A stretch of 35,687 bases of DNA. It comes from Bigelowiella natans CCMP2755 (Eukaryota > Protista > Cercozoa). Shown here one piece after another: positions 1,846-35,668 of this stretch; position 1 is the stretch's first letter, and each line of letters begins with the position of its first letter. The notes under the pieces were generated by a model. That model was not told the DNA's origin. It was given only the letters and a program-made list of their open reading frames with translations, and searched no databases. The DNA lies in assembly GCA_000320545.1 (NCBI GenBank), contig ADNK01000417.1, forward strand, positions 1 through 35,687. The letters are read 5' to 3'. Position numbers and translations under genes: made by a program.

Positions 1846-2302
1846 GTGATGACAACCAAAAACAAGGTGCGGGGCCCTGCAGACAGCGTCTCGAAAAACG
1901 TCGTTGATCCTGGAAAGGAGATGGATCTAGCAAAGATATTTCGGTACCCCGTCCAAATGAGCGATCTCGACGACGCATTCCCCAGTGATGATGGTAAGGA
2001 TGGCGGTGGTGGTGATGACAGCAAGAAGAACAGTAGGAAGGACGGGGCTCTAGAAATGACATCAACAGGGGGGGGGGGCGATGCTACGAGGAGCGACGGG
2101 CCGACTTCCATGCCAAAGAAGAAATGTACGAATTTATGAGATATAATGAGAGAGAGAGAGAGAGACCTTCGTTCACCAGTCGTGCTGATGAAGTAGAAGA
2201 ACAAGAACAAGAACAACAAGAAGAAGAAGAATGAGAAACGGGAGGAGGAGGAGGAGGAGGAGGAGGAGGAGGAGGAAGAGGATACTTCTCGTCCAGATAA
2301 AA

Positions 2303-2349
<47 letters not shown>

Positions 2350-3164
2350 GATGGCTTTGAAAATCTCCCATCATCATCCTTATCATCATCCTTATCATCA
2401 TCCTTATCATCATCCTTATCATCATCCTTATCATCATCATCATCATATCATCATCATCATCATCATCATTATTGCTCATTTCACACATAAAGCGGCTACT
2501 GCCCGTAACCTGGAGAACGTTGGGATCGGAGTGGTGCTGCTGTTTATGTATGTGGCGTTCTTGGCGAATTTCCCCATGGGGTGGACTACCATGACAGCAG
2601 CTATCATCCTTATCGTCCTTGAGAGATCTGCACAGGGGGTCTACGACATTGATTGGCAGGTCATTAAGATAATAATGATGATGAGGAGGAGGAAGAGGAG
2701 GAGGAGGATGATGACTTCTGTCACTTTCCCCCTCACCTGTAGCTAGCTGTCGGCGCCTTTGTTAGCATTATTAACGGTTGTGTTGTTGTGTGGTTTTATG
2801 CTGCACAGATTCTCATCTACATCATTGGCATGTTCGTCGTTATAACGGGAATTAACAAATCCCCACTCACGAATGTCTCTTGGAACCTTATCCAACCGCT
2901 GGTATGCTAGCAAGATGTCATTACGACTCGGTTTTCTCCGACCGATAATGATGTTCTCTACGATTACGATTCAGCTAAATAGACATCGTGCTGCGTACAA
3001 TGGCGTCAGCGTGTACACACACACACACACACACACGCACACTCACTCACTCACACTCACACACGCATGTAGTAAATGTATAATACACTGAAACGCAAGA
3101 AATAATCGGGCTGCTAGTCTTCTGCACGTAATATTTCAAACAGGGGTGGCTTTACAAAGGGCTG

Positions 3165-3207
<43 letters not shown>

Positions 3208-3703
3208 TGTTATTGTTGTTGTTGTTGTTTGTCAGGTTTTGTCGGCAAATCCCTTGTTCTCTGTGGGCGGATTCTGCCTTCTCGTGATTGTGTTGTCGTT
3301 TGTATTTACAAGCATTCCAACCGTCCTCCTTGTTAGCCCACATCTTGAGGATCTCACGGGACCAATGCGTCCATACAGGTAGTACTACAAGTAGTCATAG
3401 TAGAAGTATGCTGCTACTATGTTAGACCGTCGCTTATCCCAATCATCATCATCACCATCGTTGTCATCGTCGTCATCATTATTATCACCACCATTCAATG
3501 CTCAGCAGATTCGTTGGCTTGCTAATCAAAGTGTGTTGTATCATCCTCCCACCACCACCATCATCACCATCATCATCATCACCATCATAATCATCATCAT
3601 CATCATCTTAGTTGGTTTCTCCTGGCCTTGAGTGTCACCTTGTGCGGTAATCTCACCATCTTCGGTAGCGTTGCAGGTCGTAGCACGAACAACACACACA
3701 CAC

Positions 3704-3742
<39 letters not shown>

Positions 3743-3968
3743 TACAAATGAGTATTGAAGAAAGTGAGTATGGGTCTCATTATGTAGTTAGTGCTCTCCC
3801 TCATCATCCTCATTATCATCGTCATCATCATCGTAAACAGGGGTTATCGCCAGTCAAAAGGCCGAAGCTGCTGGAGAATCCATGGGCTTTATGCAGTGGT
3901 TCAAATTTGCCTTTCCCTCCACGCTGTTGATCCTTGCGCTCGGAGCGACTGTTTTGGTCATGATCTGA
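75..3968 (+). CDS. Lsi2/ArsB-NhaD (IT superfamily) transporter, silicon-efflux-transporter-like; 5' end lies outside the window; ~10 exons
   Basis: Exons splice in frame at GT-AG: ..PYLMAMATSANIGSAATPLG|NPKNMVV..PPALVGLV|VNTVLITLYY..(acidic loop)..GVVLLFMYVAFL..IDWQ|ILIYIIGMFVVITGI..|..SIPTVLL..|WFLLALSVTLCGNLTIFGSVAG|VIASQKA..FMQWFKFAFPSTLL..VMI* (TGA 3966-3968). SANIGS-x-TPxGNPxN, IDW-x-LxxFxGMF and GNLTxxGS are hallmark Lsi2/ArsB-family motifs. Confidence 0.85.
2369..2432. repeat. 12-bp minisatellite (CATCATCCTTAT)x~5 inside an intron, grading into (CAT)n
   Basis: Read directly from the sequence. Confidence 0.9.
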
Positions 3969-4300
3969 TGGATGGTGGCAACAAGAACAACAACATCGGT
4001 GCATGCATGCATGACGGTCACAACCGTGCAGCGTTGACTTGAGCAAGTGGTGGGATATAGTGTGCGGTCGGGGAAAGAAGGGGGGGGGGGCGCACAATTT
4101 ATGTTCCGCTGCGTACAAATGACGTGTCCGTTCGTTTGTTTGTAGGATGTGTGCTACGTGTATCGTGCACATGATGATTCATCCGAGTTCAGCAAACATT
4201 AATTACACATAGATTTTGTGCTACTAATCGTTTGTATTCTCATGACGCTGTTTGTTGTATTGTGTATTGCATACATTTTCTATATCTGACTCTGTCTACA

Positions 4301-4338
<38 letters not shown>

Positions 4339-4631
4339 CATATATAAATTTACGACCGTGATCCGTAACAACGCAAGTTCTGCGTCTAGAATAGCTAGAT
4401 AGTGGAGGCGGTGCGCCAAGCATGCATCAATGAACGTGCATATGCATTATTATGCATGCTAAATAATTAATAGCATGATCGAGTTGTAAAGACAAAACAC
4501 ATACACGGACATGCTATGGCTAGCTGCTAGATCGCACGCAGCTAGGCTATACGTACACATTACGCAATGTCGTGGTATGCATAGTTAGTGCTTCGCAGCA
4601 AGAAGGCACGGCCTATGTCTTTGCTAATACA

Positions 4632-4705
4632 ATTGCACAGCTACGCGTGCTAGCGTGAGGATGACCATTGAGCAAATTTAATTTAATTCATTATACATCC
4701 GTCTC
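4632..4705 (+). repeat. Degenerate copy of the interspersed double-hairpin repeat family
   Basis: ATTGCACAGCTAC..AGGATGACCATTGAGCAAATTTAATTTAATTCATTATACATCCGTCTC aligns by eye to 22512-22572. Confidence 0.85.
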
Positions 4706-4847
4706 GATCGTGTGAGTTGCGTCTGGCAACCATGCATGCATGCGCCATGTACGATGGCTAAGTGTGACGACAGCTCTAGAGCTAGGCAGTGCTAGAGTGC
4801 TGCACCGCGATGGGACACTCATGCAGATATGCAATCTATAGCGCGTT

Positions 4848-4863
4848 TAACCCTAACCCTAAT
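4848..4863. repeat. Short interstitial telomere-like tract (TAACCC)2 plus degenerate units
   Basis: TAACCCTAACCCTAATCTTAATC; the reverse complement is (TTAGGG)n-like. Confidence 0.5.
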
Positions 4864-4982
4864 CTTAATCTATAGCGTGCTAGTAATTATACGCTCCGTG
4901 ACCTCTCAGCAGCGAGCGAGCGATCCACAGTAGCTCGTCTGATGTCTGCCTGTGAGTGTGTGTGTTTTTACATATTCGTTGG

Positions 4983-8075: not shown

Positions 8076-8448
8076 TCCTTAGAACATAAACTACAACAGC
8101 ATCGGCCCAAAATCCCACACCCCCTCTCCCGGATCAGGCCGCCCTTCACTACGTTCTATGGGGTTGTCTAGCGACGTTGCGTCTTGTCTTTCGGCATCGG
8201 ATGGGGAGGAGGATCAAGGGGTTGTGCTCGCTGATCAACCTGGATCATCTCCGGAGAGTCTCGAATACAATCCTACCGTTTGTTGGCGCAGGATGTAATT
8301 CGCATGCTGTTTTGAACCTACGACAACATTTCGTCGCCAAAACTCCTGCGATCAAACGGAAAGGATCGCCCCCGCTCCCCGCGCATTAACGCTGCAGTGT
8401 TTCAGAGTCTTCAATAGGAATAGAGGCTGAGCAGATCAAAGCACCACC
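8076..8448. promoter_or_regulatory. Putative bidirectional promoter (ankyrin gene / Nup93)
   Basis: ~370 bp between two divergent ATGs, GC-box-like CCCGCTCCCC, dense GATC sites. Positional inference only. Confidence 0.5.
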
Positions 8449-11047
8449 ATGACAACCAAAAGATACCCAGGTTTGCAGTCCTTACTTGCTGAGTCCCTGA
8501 AGATCAATGAACATCTGCAAAGCCCTTCCACTGTCACTCGAAACCTGTCGCAGCTTCAGTACCAATCAAGGCGGTACCGACCAGCGAGCAAAGGAGTTGA
8601 CCCTTCCACACAATCCCGGGCTCAAATGTTTTACGGAGACCGATTTGATGTAAGGGAGTATGCAAAGTTAAAGAGGAAAATGGAAGAGATGCCGATCAAC
8701 AACACTCAGGAGGCCATAACGGATTTGGACGTCGAAAAAGCCCTTAAATATGAGCATGCAAAGAACACTCACAATGCGATTGAGGAGTCGATAAAAATGA
8801 CAGCCCATATTTTCCGGGTCCGACACCGGAAAAGACTTGAGGACGACTGGACAAAAGCCAAGAAGCACATCCTCGAAGAACGCGACCACCCAATGGCAAA
8901 CGCGCCCAAGCTGCAGCTACAAGGACAGCCAATGGAGAGTGAGACTCCGGCAATAGAGCACTACGCAACTGGATTTAACCTCGGTGACAACAAAATGAAT
9001 TATTATGCGGAAGTCGTGAGGAAAATTAGTGATACAAACCGCGCTGGCATGATTGAGCAATTCAAGCTTGCATGTGAAAAGGCTGAGAGGTCTTCATGGA
9101 AGGCCTCACAGAATAGGAATCCTGCAGATTCAGAGATCCAGGAGTGTTGGAATCTGATCCGAACCTTAGTGTCGTGTAGAGATGGTTCCCAACCCAAATC
9201 TTGGAACAATTATCAATCCGACACAAAGCTTCAATATAAGTTGATGGCAACCAGCACAAAGATGGCGGAGCACCAGTATTGCAAATTCGTGGAAAACGAA
9301 ATACGACGCAAACAAGCCCGGGTCGGCTCCGATCCTTCTAATGAGAATAAAATCAAGGCATTTCTGAACATACTCAGGAATGGGAGGGGGAGATTATCCG
9401 AGAAAGTCCGAGATTTATATTCAAAATCTGCAACGGAGTGGGCATTGATCTACTATTGCTATCGGTGCGGATTCCTCGAAGAGGCCAGCATGATTGCCAA
9501 CGAAAGCCTTCGGCCAAGGGAAAATTATGAAAAGTTTGTTGAAGCCATCAATAATGAGCTGAAAACTCCGGAGTCACCGCTCCAAGGATCGTTAGACACG
9601 GAGTACACGCAACACGGGAACCCCAACGAAGACCCCTTTTGCGAAGCTATGTACTGCTTGCTGCAAGCGCAGAGGAGTCCCGCGAATAGTCTGATGAAAC
9701 AAGCAGGTGTCATTGAGGGGCCCACCGATAGGATTTGGTTCAGATTGAAGTGCATCCAGAGAAGGGCAATCAATTTGTCGCAGCAAAAAGAAGGCCTGGC
9801 TGAGCTCGAAAAAATGAAAGAAGAGATTTTCAAGAAGGGGGCAAAGTTCTACACGAATAGCGGAGCGTATCCTTTCATTTACTTCAAAGTCCTCCTCCTC
9901 AGTCTTCAATTTGAACGGGCTGTCAATTACCTGGTTAGGAGAAAGTACTTTAGAGACGGGATCCACTACGCAATAGCTTTAGCTCATCACGGATTGCTTC
10001 GATACGGCAAGACAAGGGGCTACTTTAGTTATGTTCCTGGAACCTCAATTGTCGATCTAGTACGCTATGTTTCCGAATATGTGAAAAGGTTTGCTGGAAA
10101 TCCAAAAGATGCAGCTCTGGCAAAGTTCTTTTACTTCAAGGTCCTTCATTTGAGGGACCGTCGGCCAGAAGAAGATAGCAAGGATGAAGTCACGGCTTCG
10201 CAGAAGGAGATCATAAAACTACTGCTCGATAAATCTGCATCACAATACATATTCCCATTGAAAGACCCTAGACGCCTTCTCGACGACTCCCTTGGAGGTG
10301 TACAAACGAATAAAATCCTTGCAAAAGCGATGGATCAAGCTGCACGGCGGGCAGACGACAAGATTCTGGTGCTTCGACTTGGTTTTCATGCGGGGAGAGA
10401 AATGTATGCTAAAACACTGAAAACGGCTGAGGAGTACCTTTTCGAAATTGTCCCAGCAAAACCAACAAGTCAGGAGCAACAACGCTTCAAAGAGGAGCTC
10501 CTTCATCAGGCTTTTATCATATATGACGAAAGAAGGTGACTTTTGTTTTTGCTGTTTTCTTCGTGGTCATCATCAGTTAGTGATATGCTGATTTGATTGT
10601 AATATCTGCAGCGACGGGAACAGGAAGGAGAAAGAAAATATCAATCGTTTGATAGAGCTGGCGAAGAAATTCTTTGACAAATATCATTCTGGGCAATACC
10701 AAAGTATTCACCAGTATGATATAAAATATCTTCCGTACCTGAAGATCTTGCAACGAAGAGAATTTCAAGAAATGGTCAGTGAGTAACTTATTTGAGTAGT
10801 AATCCCCCCAAGTTCTTATCAACCCTGTTTATGGAAATTTAAAAAACAGGTTCGAAATTTCCACGATCATCTGGATCCGGGAATGAGGAGGGTGTATGAA
10901 AAAATGGCGGTTGCAATTATGCACATATATCGTAGTCGGCGTGATGCGCATTCCCGTCGATTAGAGGAGAATTTAATAGAATTTGTACAAAGAGTCGCTC
11001 CAGGTTCCGATTGTCTGAGAACGTTGCAAGACATCCAGGCAGCATAA
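8449..11047 (+). CDS. NUP93: Nucleoporin Nup93/Nic96; 3 exons (approx. 8449-10535, 10612-10774, 10850-11047)
   Basis: 696-aa first exon with Nic96 signatures WALIYYCYRCG, DPF, RIWFRL, PFIYFKVLLLSLQFERAVNYL and DGIHYAIALAHHGLL. Two short GT-AG introns extend the frame to ..DIQAA* (TAA 11045-11047). Confidence 0.9.
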
Positions 11048-11493
11048 ACGGCGAAAGTGTACGGCGAAGGTGGCGAGACACGAATCATTTGACACGTTTT
11101 CCAGCTGCTCTGGTTAGATCCTTTACCGGGACATGAGAAGACTATTATCTAGAATCTGCGGTGGTAGTACGTCAATTCGTGACCGCTTATTGGCACTGGG
11201 TCAATTTCACTCGATTCTGATGAGCAAAGCGGAAGTTCATTGTTGTGTGAGATATATTCTCACCCCATTCATGTCTATTAACATGAGCCTTGAAATGTGT
11301 AAGCATCGCTATGCATGCGCTGTGCCGTATGGTCATTCTATTTCGAGTGATTTGCGCAACTATTTTATGCACAAATTCAGCCTTTGCGTTATGTGCTTTA
11401 TACTGCGTGGCACTCGATCTGCTCCACGTATAGCATAGCGCCACTAGCGTATCTAGATATTGCAAGCTTAGTTTCGGTGAGGACGGCATCATT

Positions 11494-11783
11494 TATGAGA
11501 AGGATGTCATGTATTAATTAAATTTGTTCAATTGTTATATCCCAGTTATACAGTGGCTGTCTAGCTGTGCAAAGCGGAGGCTACAGCAGCGTTTTATAAA
11601 GCGTACACATCAGTTATCCGAGACGGGTGTGATGTATAAATTAAATATCTTCTCAATAATGGTCACCCTAAGCAATGTAGCTATGCGGCATTATTTATGA
11701 GACGGATGTAATGAAATGTTTTAAATTTTTTCAATGGTCATCCTAATGTAGCTATGCAGAGCTTAAGTTGTATCTGTTTGTTT
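11494..11783 (-). repeat. Three head-to-tail copies of the double-hairpin repeat family (11494-11587, 11620-11689, 11696-11783)
   Basis: 11696-11783 is nearly the exact reverse complement of 22713-22814 with one internal deletion; the other two copies are more diverged. Confidence 0.9.
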
Positions 11784-12220: not shown

Positions 12221-13056
12221 TTACACCGCTTGTTGCTGCATGTGCTGCCTACGGTCGGCGTCGGGGTCCCAAAGTTTTGCTTCTGCGCTTCTCTCTGTCG
12301 CCATATCATCCTTTTGATCAAAAGAGTCAAGTTGACGATCAGATTCGTCCTCGCCGTTGAAAGCGGCAGAGGGGGATGGATCCTGGTTATTATTCCGCTC
12401 AAGATCACCCAGCTGGGCAGGGCTGCGAAAGAGATTATTATAGCAGTTGACAGACATCGTGAAGGCCACTGGGATGGTGATGAGCAGCAGGGCCCTCAGT
12501 TCGGTGGTGAACGTTAGAATTAGCATGTTGAGTCCCAAAAACATGCATGAATAGGAGAGCACAACTCGGCGATTGTCCCAAACAACATTCGAGCTCCGCG
12601 CTACCGCACCATAGATACCCATCGTCGGTCGTTCAAGATAGAGGGGGACCGCAAAGAACGTGAAAGGCATCAGAAACAAACATGGGACGATGTAAAGACA
12701 CCATGTCACCCCTGCGAGGAGGAATATGACTGCACCTAACTTGACAGATCGTATGTACATCCCTGTGTCGCGGTAACACCTCGTAAAGTCCTCGGATATA
12801 AGATGCTCATTGCGAATACTCTCCAAGATGGCGAGAAACGCAGAAGTTATCCCCGGGGCCATGATGAGTGCCTTAGGAATAAGGGCTAGAAAGATCTTGA
12901 AGAGTATCGTTTCCAGATAGTATGAAATTGATGTCTGTCCTTCGTAAACCATCAGCCACCTAGAATTATTGTCATAATTACGTTAAATAATAACTCGTCT
13001 TCTTAACTTGTTGTGATTTACATGGACGATCATGTAACACACAGTCGATTGGCGAT

Positions 13057-19502: not shown

Positions 19503-19839
19503 ATGCTCTTCAGATCCAGAAATGTGCTCGCGTCTGCTCGAAGGATTGTGGGCTTCGTCCGGCAAACCCGGCCTATCATGACAGGTATCATCGTGCACAG
19601 TGGTAAAATACAGCCTGTTTCTGATGAGTTTGTGCGGCTTTCAGCTCGGCGCACCCCTCCGCTCCTCATGAGGTGATAGATTATAATATGGATTTTTGTG
19701 AGCTAGATCGTTACAGTGTATCTTTGCAGAAATGCCACTGTGGGTTGCTTGCAACGCCGACAATTCTCCACGGAACCCATTATTGTGCCTGATCTGGGAG
19801 ACTCCATCACAGAAGGGACGGTAGTAGAGTGGGTCAAAG

Positions 19840-19890
<51 letters not shown>

Positions 19891-21261
19891 CATCTTATAC
19901 ATATACCCTTCATTTTCAGAAAACTGAGCTCGAATCTTTGTGGTTTCCTCCCAACAAAACAAACAGGAACTCAAGATTACGTGAATGTGGACGACGTTAT
20001 TTGCGTGTTGGAAACTGATAAAGTTAGCGTGGATATCCGTTCAGAGAAGGCCGGGCTTCTCCTAGAGCACCTTGCAGAGGAAGGAGATACCGTTGAGGTG
20101 AAGAATCGTGTGTGCAATTATCGGCCCCCTCTTAACGGATTCGCATTGATATTTTTCAAGGTCGGCGCCGAAATAGCCAAGCTGGATACTGCAGCTGATG
20201 CGCCAGCACAAACCGAAGCAGCACCCAAAGGTCCATCAGCAGCCCCATCACAACACTACTTTCCTATGATGTTTGCTGACCCTGCTTGTAATCAGAAACA
20301 AGCACACCAGTTGCAGAAGAGAAAAGCGGCTCTCCTCCCCCTGCTGCTGCTCCAGCATCCACTCCCCCCCCCTCCCCGCCTAAACCTGCTGCATCCAAGG
20401 CAACCCCCGAACCAGCTCCAAAACCATCCCCTGGATCACGGTGCTACTTGTGAACATAACCCCGAAAAGTAACAAATTCTTGACAAACGCTGGTTGCTTT
20501 TTGTAGAGAGGAAAATAGGGTTGCTATGACTCGGATGAGAATGCGTATTGCTGAACGTTTGAAGGACGCGCAGAACACCGCTGCAATGCTCACGACATTT
20601 AACGAGATCGATATGTCTAATATCATGGCGGTAAGCCCTGTCATCAAAAACCAAATCGAGTGAGCAAGATGAAACAACAACCCTGTTCATATTCAGATCC
20701 GTTCCAAATACAAAGACCAATTTCTTGACAAGCATGGGGCAAAGCTGGGATTTATGTCTGCTTTTGTCGCAGCCTCCTCCAAAGCGCTTATAAACTTCCC
20801 GCAGGTCCTTGTTGTGTAATTGTGGTTGCATAGTCCACACAGTATTCCGATTATCATGATCAAAATATATAAAATATAACTCTACACGTGCACTGAAAAT
20901 CCACTCATAATTTTTCTACGATAAATTCACGGGTGAGCTGGCTTTATTTTCGGGACTAAACCCGCCTATTTATCTCCACACTTCATTGCGTCTGAACAAA
21001 AAATTATGCTCGCTTTTCTAGGTGAATGCTGCAATTGATGGCAAGGAGATTGTTTATCGTTCTTACGCGGATATCAGCGTTGCTGTAGCAACCCCAACAG
21101 GATTGGTAATAAACTGGTATCTTGCTGCGCATTATCATGCATTTGCTAATACACGTACGGTTTTCACAGGTTACGCCAGTATTACGAAATACAGAAAACA
21201 TGAGCTTCTACGATATTGAAGCTGAAATCGCTGCCCTCGGCAAGAAAGCTCGCGATGTAAA

Positions 21262-21310
<49 letters not shown>

Positions 21311-21824: not shown

Positions 21825-22415
21825 TTGTCCGTTTCACCTAGTCGTCTTTACGGAGGCGCAGTAATCACATTTTCGATTTTAGTAGGAAAACCAACTGTGT
21901 CGCACAAACAAAGGCCACATTGCATCAAACCATCGATCATACTTGTACATCGTGAAGCGTACTTGCTTTTTCTGGGTGTTTGCAAGTGCAAGGATGTGAT
22001 GAAAATCCAGCACATCATACATGGATTCCACAGCTTGCTTCAATGAGTCAATATTGCAGATTACATAGCTGCTGCACATGTAGCTTCGCTCTACTTGTGC
22101 TGTGTATTCTCTAAGTATTTATATATATATTAATAAGACTACATAGCGAACGCACTGCCAAGCTAGCATGCTAGCATGGCTGAATATTCGCACTATTATT
22201 GGGGTCATTGTGATGCGCAAGCACGCGATGTCGTCATACTATCGTAGCATACCTATGCTAGCTAGTCGAGCGGCTAGATAATGAGCTCATTCTACAGAGC
22301 ACACGCACAACACTAGAGACTAGATCTAGTAGATATAAAATCTATAGATCAAAATGTTTAGCTCATCGCGTCCCCGAAAATTCTCGCTCACCATTGCGGG
22401 CGAACTCTTATAGCA

Positions 22416-22824
22416 ATAATCCCGCACGGTCGAAAGAGAATGCTTTTGCATGCATGAAGCACAGAGAGTGGCAGAAACCAACAGACACAACATCAGCGCT
22501 GTAGCCGCTGCATTGCACAGCTACATCAGGATGACCATTGAAAAAATTTAATTTATTCATTACATCCGTCTCATAATCCCGCACGGATAACTCAATCTAA
22601 GGCCAAATAATACAAATTAGCTCGTATATTATCAACATACAACCTGGCATATATATAATGGCTTGCTAGACCTAATCATCGTGCATTTTCATGCATGCAT
22701 CATGTGACCAAGGAAACCAACAGATACAACTTAAGCGCTGTAGCCGCTGCATTGCATAGCTACATTAGGATGACCATTGAAAAAATTTAAACATTTCATT
22801 ACATCCGTCTCATATATAATGGCT
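22416..22824 (+). repeat. Two best-preserved copies of the double-hairpin repeat family (cores 22474-22575 and 22713-22814), each with its own 13-14 bp flanking duplication
   Basis: GAAACCAACAGA(C/T)ACAAC..AGCGCTGTAGCCGCTGCATTGCA(C/T)AGCTACAT(C/T)AGGATGACCATTGAAAAAATTTAA..TTCATTACATCCGTCTCATA occurs twice. Confidence 0.92.
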
Positions 22825-23740: not shown

Positions 23741-23787
<47 letters not shown>

Positions 23788-25950
23788 TGCTGAGTGCTAC
23801 TACCAACTCTCTGCACCCCGTCCACAATCCATTTCTCAGCCCCACAGTTCGGGCCACAGCTGTGATTCATGAATCGCCCGTTGTTAGCCATTTCCGTTGC
23901 ATCTATGATCATCGAGTTGTTAACCTGATTGATTGAGGGGGGGGGGGGTCCAAAAAATGCAGGCATCATTTCATCGAATTTGCTTATCCATCCCACTTTT
24001 AAAGAGGAAGAGAGTAATAACCTCAAGAAAGTAAAAGTTCTTTGCTCCAGCTTCCTGCATCTTCTTCATCCGTACGTCACACTCCTTTCGATCGATGATC
24101 TGATGATGAAGAACAGTGTAAGGCCATTACGCAGCAGTGGAAGAAGGACTGCGAAGAAAATATTGAGAGAATCATCACCTCCCCCACGTATTCTATGATG
24201 AGGTCGTCCTCTTTGACATCATTTTTCGCAAACATCCCAAATCCTCGGTTCGCCGTGTACTTGATTACATGGGGTGTCCACTCACGTCTACTGAGCCTTT
24301 GATTCTACGGTTTGGCAGCAAAAAAAACGATGCAAAGAATTGCGAATTTAGTAGTAGTCCTGTGCGCGTTGGAGATAAAAAAAATACGTGGTATTCGTTA
24401 TGCCTTGCTGTTGGGAAAATGCAGCACAAGTGGTGCGTGTGGTGCGACACAAGTGTTTGACAGGAAGGACAAACCCTGCAGAACTTCGAATCGCAGGTTT
24501 TCTTGTAGCACTCTAGCTTCATTGCACGGTTGTGGCAAGACCCCGTCCCGCACATTCCCTCTCCAACCTGGATCATATGTCGGGTTACTCACTCATTAAG
24601 TACTGTCTGCACAACGACGAATGGTTGTATTATTCCACGGTAGCATCGACGTTCTTCATGGAAAATAATAAGATCGATAGTAATACCTTGCAATTGCACT
24701 TCGGTTCGTCGCCTTTCGCATAGCCTGTTTGGGGCTTTTTAATGAAGAATCTGTTTACTGCCAATTTCTTAAACTTTGGAGGGCGTTTCCGGAGAGCCTA
24801 TTATCAAGATGGATTAGTGACAGCAGCACATCGATATCTGTGAAGTGGCGGCACTCATAAGAGCGGACAGTATAATCGTCATCATTTGTCAATATATAGG
24901 TGCTGCTACTACCTCACGTTGCCTGATCTTCTCCACATCCATCTTAATTTTGCTTGGGATTTTGAACTCGCTTGTAGATGAAGGCAGGGGGGATCTCCAT
25001 ATTCCCAAGGGGATAAAGCCCTCAAGCACCTCAGATATTCTGTCCTTCTTGACAGGCTTACGGGGAGGTAAGAAGTCCTCTCCAAATATTCGAATCTCAT
25101 TGTAGTGATTCAGAGCTGCCCTTTTGTTTACGTCCTCAAATTGGTATTTATGACGATGCTTGCTACAGACCATGTAGTAGTCTGATATCAAATCCTCACA
25201 TCCAATTCCGCAATTAGGCATATGACGTGCGGTGAGGCAATCTACACATCTCTTTATCTTGACATTCATCTTGGATTCGCAAAGGTGGCACTCATGGCCC
25301 GGGCATTTGAACCCTTTGAGTTTGTTCGCCTTTATCTTTGGCGGAAGGCATTCGCGGTGAAAGAAAACAAAGCAATTCTTCTTATTGCATTTCAGAACAG
25401 TTCCCGAGTAATCCATGTCTTTGACTGAACGAGGTTCCCCAACACTTCCATCATCATCACCGACGGCATCACTCTCTGCTGGTACGTTCTCCGCATTGTC
25501 GTTTTCTTTTGCGGAATCCTCACTTGACGATGCTGTTGAACTGTCTTTAGAGCAGAGCCAAGAATCTATATCTACAACTGTTCCGTACTTTTTGCAGCCC
25601 ATGCACATCCAGCGATTCTGGGAGCAGTTTTGACATTCCCAGTCTTTTTTCTGGTCATCACTAAGTTGTTCGTTGTCTTCTCCTGCTCGGCAGCAGCCCA
25701 AATGGAATACGCGCTCGCATTTGTTGCAAGTCAAACCATCGTCCCCGATGATTCCACGACAAGCGAAGCATGATTTGTACCCTTTCCTCGATGATTTTTT
25801 TGGGGGATTATTATCTTCAGAGATTTCTGTTGTTGGGCCTTCCCTATCCTTATCCAACGCAGCTAGCGACGGCAGGGTGCTGCAGTCAAACTGCGACGCA
25901 TTTCCGATTTCCTGTTTTTCAACGGCTCCGCATGGATTGGGCGAAGCCAT
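23095..25950 (-). CDS. Histone-lysine N-methyltransferase, NSD/ASH1(ASHH)-like H3K36 type: PHD fingers + AWS + SET + post-SET; ~9 exons
   Basis: CFAC..CNKCERVFHLGC..WECQNC; CFVFFHREC..FKCPGHEC; CHNRAMKLEC..C; RGFGMFA..LIIEYVGE|II; IDATEMANNGRFMNHSCGPNC; GTELTWDY; CLCGAKNCSG; last exon LFLIRNVKKV..SRNA*. Confidence 0.92.
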
Positions 25951-27000
25951 GAAAAGATTCCCCCCCCCTTGCTTCTAGACAAAAGAAGTTGCTCTGGTGG
26001 CGGGAAAGTGACACTCTGCGTCGGCTCTGAAATTACCTCCCCGGGATTTATCACATAAAAACGGGATTTTTACGAATATGAGATAATGCCCGTGCAATAT
26101 ATGTGAAAGACCCACAACATTGCACTCAATTACAAAATATGACAAAATCCGTTGAACTTGTAGCAAGTCGCTGAGATTTTCTAAACCCGAATTATTGTTT
26201 AAAATCGTTTGAGTTGCATCGAATCAGATTTATCTTTATGTTGAGTTTCGTTAAATAAATCTGTTAATATTTAATTAAAATAAATATTTGGATGTCGTAT
26301 AAATAAATAATAATATTTTTCTTAATATTTATTTGATAAAATGTTTACATCTACGTTCTAAAAAAGTATATGAGAATTTCGACGATTGCGCAAACCTACC
26401 TTATAAGATTGTTACTGTACAATAAATCTGTGCATATTTTGCGAATAAATGACAGTTTACGCCTATAATTTCCATAATTCCATGAGTAAGTAATGATTTA
26501 GAAGGGATTGTTGTATGGTTCTTAACAATAACAATCTTGAACGTCCTTCCCGCCTACAATGAACAAACTTTCCAGATTTAGCAATAGATAATCGATTACA
26601 TCTTTATAAGGAATGTGAGGTGAAAAATGAAATAATTTACACAAAAGTATGCATAATCACATGTATCGAATGGTACATTCTTCCAATTACTTCATATTTT
26701 CATCTTTTCTTTTTTTCAGAATGAATTTGGCATTACTCCATACCCTCAGATAGGCGTAATAGATGGTATTTATCAATTTATATCCCAAAAACTCTTGGAA
26801 AATTGAAAATCCGGACTCCCGAATTATTATCTCTCCTCGTATTTGGTATATTGGTCTGAACTTCGTCGAAACTTCTCCCCAGAACCTAACCCGCCCACCA
26901 ACCGAAGATCAGTGGATCTACAAGCGTAAGGGGTGACCCCGCTTGATCCATACTAGGGCGTCTCGGGATCCACGAATTATTCGTGCGAAGCCCTGGGACC

Positions 27001-29590: not shown

Positions 29591-29633
<43 letters not shown>

Positions 29634-33602: not shown

Positions 33603-33650
<48 letters not shown>

Positions 33651-33722
33651 TAATATTTCAGGTGTGCGATCGATTCTTTTACGTTAAATCCTCTTGGCAA
33701 ACGTGCATGGCTACCGGTAGTA

Positions 33723-33763
<41 letters not shown>

Positions 33764-35624: not shown

Positions 35625-35668
<44 letters not shown>

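What the first reader, a model, noticed from the sequence alone, without database searches (positions are those of the whole stretch)
22416..22824. Apparently undescribed structured repeat with 13-14 bp flanking duplications, found only in convergent 3'-3' gene junctions
Seen: at least six copies of a ~100-150 bp unit (4632-4705 +; 11494-11587, 11620-11689, 11696-11783 -; 22474-22575, 22713-22814 +). All lie between convergent gene ends and I saw none in introns or promoters. The unit can fold into two hairpins: TGTAGC..GCTACA (22739-22764) and GGATG..TGAAA..TTTCA..CATCC (22768-22806). One end is fixed at ..CATCCGTCTC, while the other is ragged. Each well-preserved insertion has its own direct repeat: ATAATCCCGCACGG (22416/22573), ATATATAATGGCT (22651/22812) and CGGCAT(C/T)ATTTAT (11484/11686); all share an ATAAT-like core next to the fixed end. 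Inference: a non-autonomous, target-primed (SINE/Penelope-like) element that targets transcription-termination zones, or a dispersed terminator/insulator ncRNA. Caveat: GGATAACT follows two different copies, so the duplications could instead belong to a larger satellite unit.
Basis: partly seen in the sequence, partly recalled or inferred. Interest (0 to 1): 0.8.

Follow-up and report, generated by a model that had tools for sequence, protein, structure and literature searches.

The report
Truncated LINE retrotransposon tails between genes
The "structured repeat" is the last 50-150 bases of an ordinary, probably still active 5-kb LINE jumping gene of the alga Bigelowiella natans. Its stubs do pile up mostly between genes that end tail-to-tail, but why they do so is not settled.

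Summary
The repeat is real. There are exactly six copies at three places in the window (nhmmer). The 17-base 3' end occurs 629 times in this 91-Mb genome and 0 times in the reversed control.

It is not a new non-autonomous element. Every copy is collinear with the 3' end of a ~4.95-kb non-LTR retrotransposon. That element has ORF1 (483 aa) and ORF2 (1158 aa, APE endonuclease plus reverse transcriptase). The stop codon of ORF2 lies in the loop of the terminal hairpin, 20 nt from the element's end.

The copies carry the signs of target-primed reverse transcription:
- a fixed 3' end;
- ragged 5' ends, with a median length of about 95 bp;
- locus-specific target duplications of 4-16 bp;
- a target motif T|ATATAT.

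The bias towards convergent junctions holds in a sample not chosen by context. 14 of 19 classifiable insertions lie between ORFs that point at each other, and none lies between diverging ORFs (p=1e-5 against 25%). "Only" is too strong: 5 of 19 are tandem, and the window copy at 4632-4705 looks tandem too.

I could not decide whether the bias comes from active targeting or from survival in a harmless "dumping ground".

This scan reached the same conclusion earlier on other DNA of this genome (s1-715957, s1-715900).

The parts
22430..22572 (+). 5'-truncated LINE tail, copy A (143 bp, diverged subfamily), ending ..CATCCGTCTC
   Evidence: (D19)
22416..22429 (.). 5' copy of the target-site duplication of copy A (ATAATCCCGCACGG); the 3' copy is at 22573-22586
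   Evidence: read directly
22573..22586 (.). 3' copy of the target-site duplication of copy A
22664..22811 (+). 5'-truncated LINE tail, copy B (148 bp). Its last 102 bp are 100% identical to copies on five other contigs
22651..22663 (.). 5' copy of the target-site duplication of copy B (ATATATAATGGCT); the 3' copy is at 22812-22824
22812..22824 (.). 3' copy of the target-site duplication of copy B
11699..11783 (-). LINE tail (85 bp), first of three head-to-tail tails
11620..11689 (-). Diverged LINE tail whose outer stem reads GGGTG..CACCC where most copies read GGATG..CATCC
11497..11587 (-). Diverged LINE tail ending ..CATCCTTCTC
11484..11496 (.). 13-bp direct repeat (12 of 13 identical) with 11686-11698. 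It brackets tails 2 and 3 plus a 32-nt linker
   Evidence: the array is unique in the genome
4632..4705 (+). Old LINE tail (about 81% identical), with no recognisable duplication
19828..20469 (+). Exon of the left flanking gene (Biotin_lipoyl domain), pointing towards the 22.5-kb insertions
24892..25974 (-). Right flanking gene (PHD fingers), pointing towards the 22.5-kb insertions
8431..10536 (+). Nup93/Nic96 gene exon, pointing towards the 11.5-kb insertions
12224..12982 (-). ORF with coding-like codon usage, pointing towards the 11.5-kb insertions

Best explanation
The copies are 5'-truncated insertions of an autonomous APE-type non-LTR retrotransposon (LINE) of about 4.95 kb in Bigelowiella natans or a very near relative.

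Likely mechanism:
1. The element's RNA is copied into the genome by target-primed reverse transcription.
2. ORF2p nicks the bottom strand at T|ATATAT-like sites.
3. The 3' end of the RNA (..GUCUC, probably followed by AUA) pairs with the nicked TAT end.
4. Reverse transcription starts there and usually aborts within about 100 nt.
5. A staggered second nick 4-16 nt away produces the locus-specific duplication.

The 5' copy of the duplication recreates the target. Sites are therefore reused and head-to-tail or back-to-back tail clusters form.

The terminal 45 nt can form a stem-loop that spans the ORF2 stop codon. It is probably the tail that the reverse transcriptase recognises.

Shown: element identity, domain content, intact copies, fixed 3' end, truncation, duplications, target motif, excess at convergent junctions.
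Inferred: RNA-primer pairing, recognition of the stem-loop, and the cause of the excess.
For: Element identity:
- Homology of the tail extends upstream without a break to 389, 806, 1247 and about 5000 bp in different loci.
- L031 carries RVT_1 and Exo_endo_phos_2.
- Metagenome contigs L033 and L034 carry ORF1 (483 aa) and an intact ORF2 of 1158 aa. They end ..CATCCGTCTC, 20 nt after the stop codon.
- The ORF2 C-terminus is conserved to the last residue in a 69%-identical relative.
- No LTRs or terminal inverted repeats are present.

Activity and abundance:
- The genome holds an intact 1173-aa open frame at C3248:62236-65709, plus about nine intact copies of a sister family.
- There are 629 exact 17-mer ends against 0 in the control.
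- There were 1671 first-look candidates, many 96-100% identical.

Insertion signature:
- 40 of 65 copies have duplications of 5-16 bp.
- In the target logo, -1 is T in 18/23 sites, +1 is A in 23/23, +2 is T in 21/23 and +3 is A in 22/23.
- At L021 the duplication spans the junction of an older tail, which shows site re-use.

Location:
- 14 of 19 insertions are convergent at ORFs of 110 codons or more, and 10 of 15 at 150 or more.

Host:
- The ORF2 protein cluster includes a EukProt B. natans protein.
Against: - The clade of the LINE is unassigned, and I could not check Repbase or Dfam.
- The hairpin has an unremarkable folding energy (z = -1.3). Only four cells show compensatory change, which is similar to the slid controls. 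Its conservation could come from coding constraint alone.
Current activity is therefore inferred.
- Gene strands were inferred from ORF length and codon usage, not from an annotation. At a 90-codon threshold the convergent excess fades (8 of 19).
Confidence: 0.9

Rival explanations
1. The excess at convergent junctions comes from survival, not aim. The LINE inserts widely at TA-rich sites. In this compact genome with a large population, only short stubs in promoter-free 3'-3' spacers escape purifying selection.
For: - Truncation is extreme (median about 95 bp of a 5-kb element), as expected if only small insertions are tolerated.
- Convergent spacers with tails are also rich in other debris. 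CTAG occurs at 7.6 per kb there, against 1.6-3.3 per kb elsewhere. Earlier notes describe these spacers as a general dumping ground (s1-706872).
- 5 of 19 insertions lie elsewhere.
Against: - Copies 96-100% identical to each other already show the bias: 25 of 35 flanking ORFs point towards the insertion.
- No insertion falls in a diverging gap, and few fall in tandem or intron-like gaps, although introns should tolerate 100-bp inserts.
- These are small samples with heuristic gene calls.
Confidence: 0.5
2. The LINE machinery is actively directed to termination zones between convergent genes, for example by chromatin, open DNA or stalled polymerases, in addition to its T|ATATAT motif.
For: - The enrichment is strong (14 of 19 against 25% or less expected) and the youngest copies share it.
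- (TA)4-or-longer tracts are not denser in LINE-free convergent gaps (0.16 per kb) than in diverging gaps (0.19 per kb) or tandem gaps (0.38 per kb). Motif supply alone does not explain the bias.
Against: - No candidate targeting domain was found: ORF1 and the ORF2 C-terminal region have no Pfam match.
- Other, unrelated debris accumulates in the same spacers, which favours a passive explanation.
- Tract counts are small.
Confidence: 0.35
3. A separate non-autonomous SINE or Penelope-like element that merely shares the LINE tail.
For: Most copies are short and non-coding in themselves.
Against: - Every copy examined is collinear with the LINE's 3' end, with a continuous range of truncation points.
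- No tRNA-like head was found and Rfam finds nothing.
- The endonuclease is APE-type, not GIY-YIG.
Confidence: 0.03
4. A host terminator, insulator or ncRNA element dispersed at gene ends.
For: Its position at 3' ends and a predicted hairpin.
Against: - The sequence is the reading frame of the ORF2 C-terminus plus a 20-nt UTR.
- Copies carry insertion duplications.
- Both orientations are equally common: 316 against 313.
- Many convergent gaps lack it: 13 of 27.
Confidence: 0.02

Closest known systems
APE-type non-LTR retrotransposons (LINEs) with specific ('stringent') 3'-tail recognition, such as eel UnaL2 and the L2/CR1-type elements (from general knowledge of the field, not tested here)
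   Same: - APE plus RT in ORF2.
- No poly(A) tail.
- A conserved 3'-terminal stem-loop followed by a few bases that pair with the target.
- Heavy 5' truncation and variable target duplications.
   Different: - The ORF2 stop codon lies inside the terminal hairpin loop, so the 3' UTR is only about 20 nt.
- The clade is unassigned.
- The nearest RTs outside the family are fish APE+RT(+RNase H) proteins at 29-30% identity.
- By sequence, the nearest solved structures are R2 for the RT and TRAS1 for the endonuclease.
RTE-clade LINEs (very short 3' UTRs; recalled from the literature, not tested)
   Same: ORF2 runs almost to the 3' end, and the tail is a short AT-rich repeat.
   Different: This element is about 5 kb with a 483-aa ORF1. 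RTE elements are about 3.2 kb and lack a substantial ORF1.
SINEs that borrow a LINE tail
   Same: Short, abundant, made by target-primed reverse transcription, with the same 3' end as the partner LINE.
   Different: There is no independent head or pol III promoter. The copies are plain 5' truncations of the LINE itself.
Earlier reports of this scan on the same genome (s1-715957, s1-715900)
   Same: They describe truncated LINE tails sitting mostly between convergent genes of B. natans.
   Different: This is other DNA of the same genome.

Membership tests
APE-type non-LTR retrotransposon (LINE) | Reverse transcriptase domain | tested here: met
   PF00078: E=3e-10 in L031 and 2.4e-16 in P0001
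APE-type non-LTR retrotransposon (LINE) | Apurinic-like endonuclease N-terminal to the RT in the same ORF | tested here: met
   PF14529 at residues 116-231 and RVT_1 at 527-747 of the 1158-aa ORF2
APE-type non-LTR retrotransposon (LINE) | No LTRs or terminal inverted repeats | tested here: met
   The repeat finder on L033 gives only chance 23-27-nt matches
APE-type non-LTR retrotransposon (LINE) | Fixed 3' end, variable 5' truncation, target duplications of variable length | tested here: met
   truncation points from under 30 bp to about 5 kb; duplications of 4-16 bp at 40 of 65 copies
APE-type non-LTR retrotransposon (LINE) | Assignment to a named clade by RT phylogeny | not testable with these tools
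   No Repbase, Dfam or RTclass1 reference set is available. There are only weak leads
SINE | Head derived from tRNA, 5S or 7SL with a pol III promoter, unrelated to the LINE body | tested here: not met
   ARAGORN and Rfam find nothing. Sequence upstream of the tail is LINE coding sequence in every longer copy
Penelope-like element | GIY-YIG endonuclease C-terminal to the RT | tested here: not met
   The endonuclease is APE-type and N-terminal. The 379 residues after the RT have no Pfam match
Helitron | Insertion between A and T without a target duplication, with a 3' hairpin followed by CTRR | tested here: not met
   Duplications of 5-16 bp are present, the element encodes an RT and it ends GTCTC
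Satellite or larger tandem unit | The same flanks or junctions at all loci | tested here: not met
   Flanks differ at 30 loci. The tail array 11484-11700 is unique in the genome

The most novel reading that the evidence does not exclude
An APE-type LINE whose integration is actively steered into the short termination zones between convergent genes of a compact algal genome. This would be safe-haven targeting not explained by its T|ATATAT motif. Its RNA recognition hairpin overlaps the ORF2 stop codon.
Probability: 0.3. Interest if true: 0.55.

Novelty: new member of a known kind. Interest (0 to 1): 0.3.

Why it matters
This removes a candidate new class of structured repeat: it is LINE debris.

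What remains of interest to transposon biologists:
- A strong excess at convergent junctions in a free-living alga.
- A clear TA-tract target motif.
- Tandem tail arrays built by re-use of the regenerated target.
- An unusual layout in which the cis-acting 3' hairpin overlaps the end of ORF2.

If the bias proved to be true targeting, it would be a new example of a LINE that avoids harm by aiming at termination zones. For annotators of B. natans, these tails should be masked before anyone calls terminators, ncRNAs or miRNA-like hairpins in 3'-3' spacers.

Tried and rejected
- Rfam at gathering thresholds and ARAGORN on the whole window found nothing.
- SINE, Penelope-like, Helitron, MITE and satellite readings were rejected (see the membership tests).
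- I tested whether TA-tract supply explains the bias. (TA)4-or-longer tracts are not denser in LINE-free convergent gaps, though counts are small.
- I planned 60 loci with 5 kb on each side.
- Literature searches found no description of this LINE or of its placement. The 2026 preprint on TpA hypermutation in B. natans (10.64898/2026.01.13.699255) concerns viral inserts and only mentions RT domains among TpA-depleted genes.
- Pfam scans of ORF1 and of the ORF2 C-terminal 379 residues found no domain.
- The protein atlas gave only generic RT/endonuclease clusters.
- The GGATAACT that follows two copies was not pursued. By my rough estimate, an 8-mer shared by two flanks has about a 0.1 chance of arising here by accident.

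Full report
**What is in the window.**
The region 22416-22824 holds two direct copies, 91% identical over 102 nt (family D19; sequence). A profile built from 43 tails finds exactly six copies in the window.
- 4632-4705 (+);
- three head-to-tail copies on the minus strand between 11497 and 11783;
- 22430-22572 and 22664-22811 (+).

Both 22.5-kb copies are bracketed by exact duplications that abut the element ends. ATAATCCCGCACGG lies at 22416-22429 and 22573-22586. ATATATAATGGCT lies at 22651-22663 and 22812-22824.

The third repeat, at 11484-11496 and 11686-11698, matches at 12 of 13 bases. It brackets two tails plus a 32-nt linker rather than one copy. Either one insertion event produced a chimaera, for instance by template switching, or the site was used repeatedly. 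I could not tell which.

**It is a genome-wide mobile element.**
The window is contig C3320 of a 91.4-Mb assembly. The 102-nt query gave 1671 first-look candidates, and dozens of scored copies were 96-100% identical. The last 17 bases occur 629 times (316 forward, 313 reverse), against 0 for the reversed control.

Aligning 30 loci shows one sharp 3' end (..CATCCGTCTC), unrelated flanks at every locus, and 5' ends that stop at many different points. The tail array at 11484-11700 occurs nowhere else.

**It is the tail of a LINE.**
Following the longest copies upstream, homology continues for 389, 806, 1247 and finally about 5000 bp. The genomic copy in L031 encodes RVT_1 and an APE-type endonuclease, but it is frameshifted.

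A protein search found an intact 1158-aa ORF2 (P0001). Its 90%-identity cluster includes a EukProt Bigelowiella natans protein. With the assembly size, this identifies the host as B. natans or a very near relative.

Two Tara Oceans contigs (L033, L034) carry the whole element: a short 5' UTR, ORF1 of 483 aa, then an overlapping ORF2 of 1158 aa with Exo_endo_phos_2 at residues 116-231 and RVT_1 at 527-747. ORF1 has a coiled-coil-like stretch but no Pfam domain. There are no LTRs or terminal inverted repeats.

The host genome itself has an uninterrupted 1173-aa frame at C3248:62236-65709 (88% identical). It also has about nine intact copies of a 69%-identical sister family. Together with the many near-identical stubs, this suggests recent or current activity.

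**An unusual detail.**
ORF2 ends at a TAA (TGA in L034) that lies in the loop of the terminal hairpin, 20 nt before the element's end.

A relative only 69% identical overall ends at the same residue, and 25 of its last 27 residues are identical. This fits a double constraint, protein plus a cis-acting RNA end.

Across 43 distinct tails, 88.8% of cells pair. Four pairs show a change on both sides, against 1.0 in shuffles, but slid controls reach one to three. One of these changes is the GGGTG..CACCC variant at 11620-11689. The structure is plausible but not demonstrated.

**Insertion mechanism.**
Of 65 copies with both flanks available, 40 have duplications of 5-16 bp. The flank after GTCTC begins ATA in 49 of them.

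For 23 copies with clean duplications of 7 bp or more, the target reads T at -1 (18/23), then A (23/23), T (21/23), A (22/23), T (16/23), A (16/23) and T (18/23). That is T|ATATAT.

In ten cases an extra AT or ATA lies between the element and the duplication. This suggests that the RNA ends ..GUCUCAUA and pairs with the nicked TAT end.

These are the classic marks of target-primed reverse transcription. Truncation is severe: the copies in the sample not chosen by context have a median length near 95 bp.

Because the 5' copy of the duplication recreates the target, sites are re-used. At L021 the duplication of a young copy spans the junction of an older tail. Tandem or inverted tails are common.

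**Position relative to genes.**
No annotation was available. I inferred strands from stop-free ORFs outside LINE sequence and outside low-complexity runs.

For 22 loci taken in contig order from the 17-mer list, and so not chosen by context, the central insertion lay:
- between ORFs pointing at each other in 14 of 19 classifiable cases at 110 codons or more;
- in 10 of 15 at 150 codons or more;
- in 7 of 9 at 200 codons or more;
- never between diverging ORFs at these thresholds.

Against a generous 25% expectation, p is 1.2e-5 at 110 codons. At 90 codons spurious ORFs blur the signal (8 of 19).

Counted by side, 34 of 40 flanking ORFs point towards the insertion in this sample. In the 29 loci with only 1.5-kb flanks the figure is 25 of 35.

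In the window, Pfam and a codon-usage score support convergent genes around the 11.5-kb and 22.5-kb loci. The 4632-4705 copy seems to lie between two minus-strand coding stretches.

So the excess is real, but "only" is not.

**Why there?**
TA tracts are not more frequent in LINE-free convergent gaps than elsewhere, so motif supply does not explain the bias.

On the other hand, these spacers also carry an excess of CTAG-rich debris. Earlier reports of this scan describe them as a general dumping ground for mobile DNA. That favours tolerance over aim.

I put roughly even odds on selection and somewhat lower odds on active targeting. The two are not exclusive. De novo insertions would decide.

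**Relation to earlier work.**
This scan had already reached the same identification on other DNA of this genome (s1-715957, s1-715900, s1-727028, s1-706872). I reached mine independently, before reading them.

I found no paper that describes this LINE or its placement. I could not consult Repbase or Dfam.

**Verdict.**
This is a real repeat, correctly seen and correctly read as target-primed. It is ordinary in kind: truncated tails of a LINE.

Noticed in passing
window 22300-22350, 4500-4560, 4770-4800; loci L038-L056: Spacers that hold the tails are rich in CTAG and other four-base palindromes. CTAG occurs at 7.6 per kb in convergent gaps with tails, against 1.6-3.3 per kb in other gaps. This matches earlier scan notes on CTAG 'scars'.
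   Followed up: partly
window 4849-4864: A short telomere-like run (about 2.5 units of CCCTAA) sits in the same spacer as the 4632-4705 tail.
   Followed up: no
window, e.g. 176-250, 1223-1346, 2299-2345, 4300-4340, 21262-21305, 23746-23780, 29591-29630, 33603-33760, 35625-35665: There are many long (TA)n, (GT)n, (GA)n and trinucleotide microsatellites, often compound such as (GT)n(AT)n. (TA)n is the LINE's preferred target. LINE 3' ends may also seed such tracts: tract density is higher in gaps with tails.
   Followed up: partly
G000:C1129:73919-77371, C515:13221-16673, C2494:6241-9693 and six more: A sister LINE family is 69% identical in ORF2. It has about nine copies with uninterrupted frames of 1179 aa or more, so it looks at least as intact as the family studied here.
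   Followed up: no
loci L002-L030, tail positions 13 and 45 of the 102-nt query: Two of the five subfamily-diagnostic differences among young tails are TA to CA changes (GATACA/GACACA and CATAGC/CACAGC). This is the direction of the TpA hypermutation reported for B. natans. The sample is too small to draw a conclusion.
   Followed up: no
L033, L034 (Tara Oceans metagenome contigs): Full-length, intact copies of this LINE with their own flanks appear in open-ocean metagenomes. The family is therefore present in natural chlorarachniophyte populations. L034 also has a second, inverted tail 100 bp downstream.
   Followed up: partly
window 2200-3850: Long acidic trinucleotide-repeat coding stretches (GAG/GAT on one strand, then on the other) make strand calls ambiguous to the left of the 4632-4705 tail.
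   Followed up: partly
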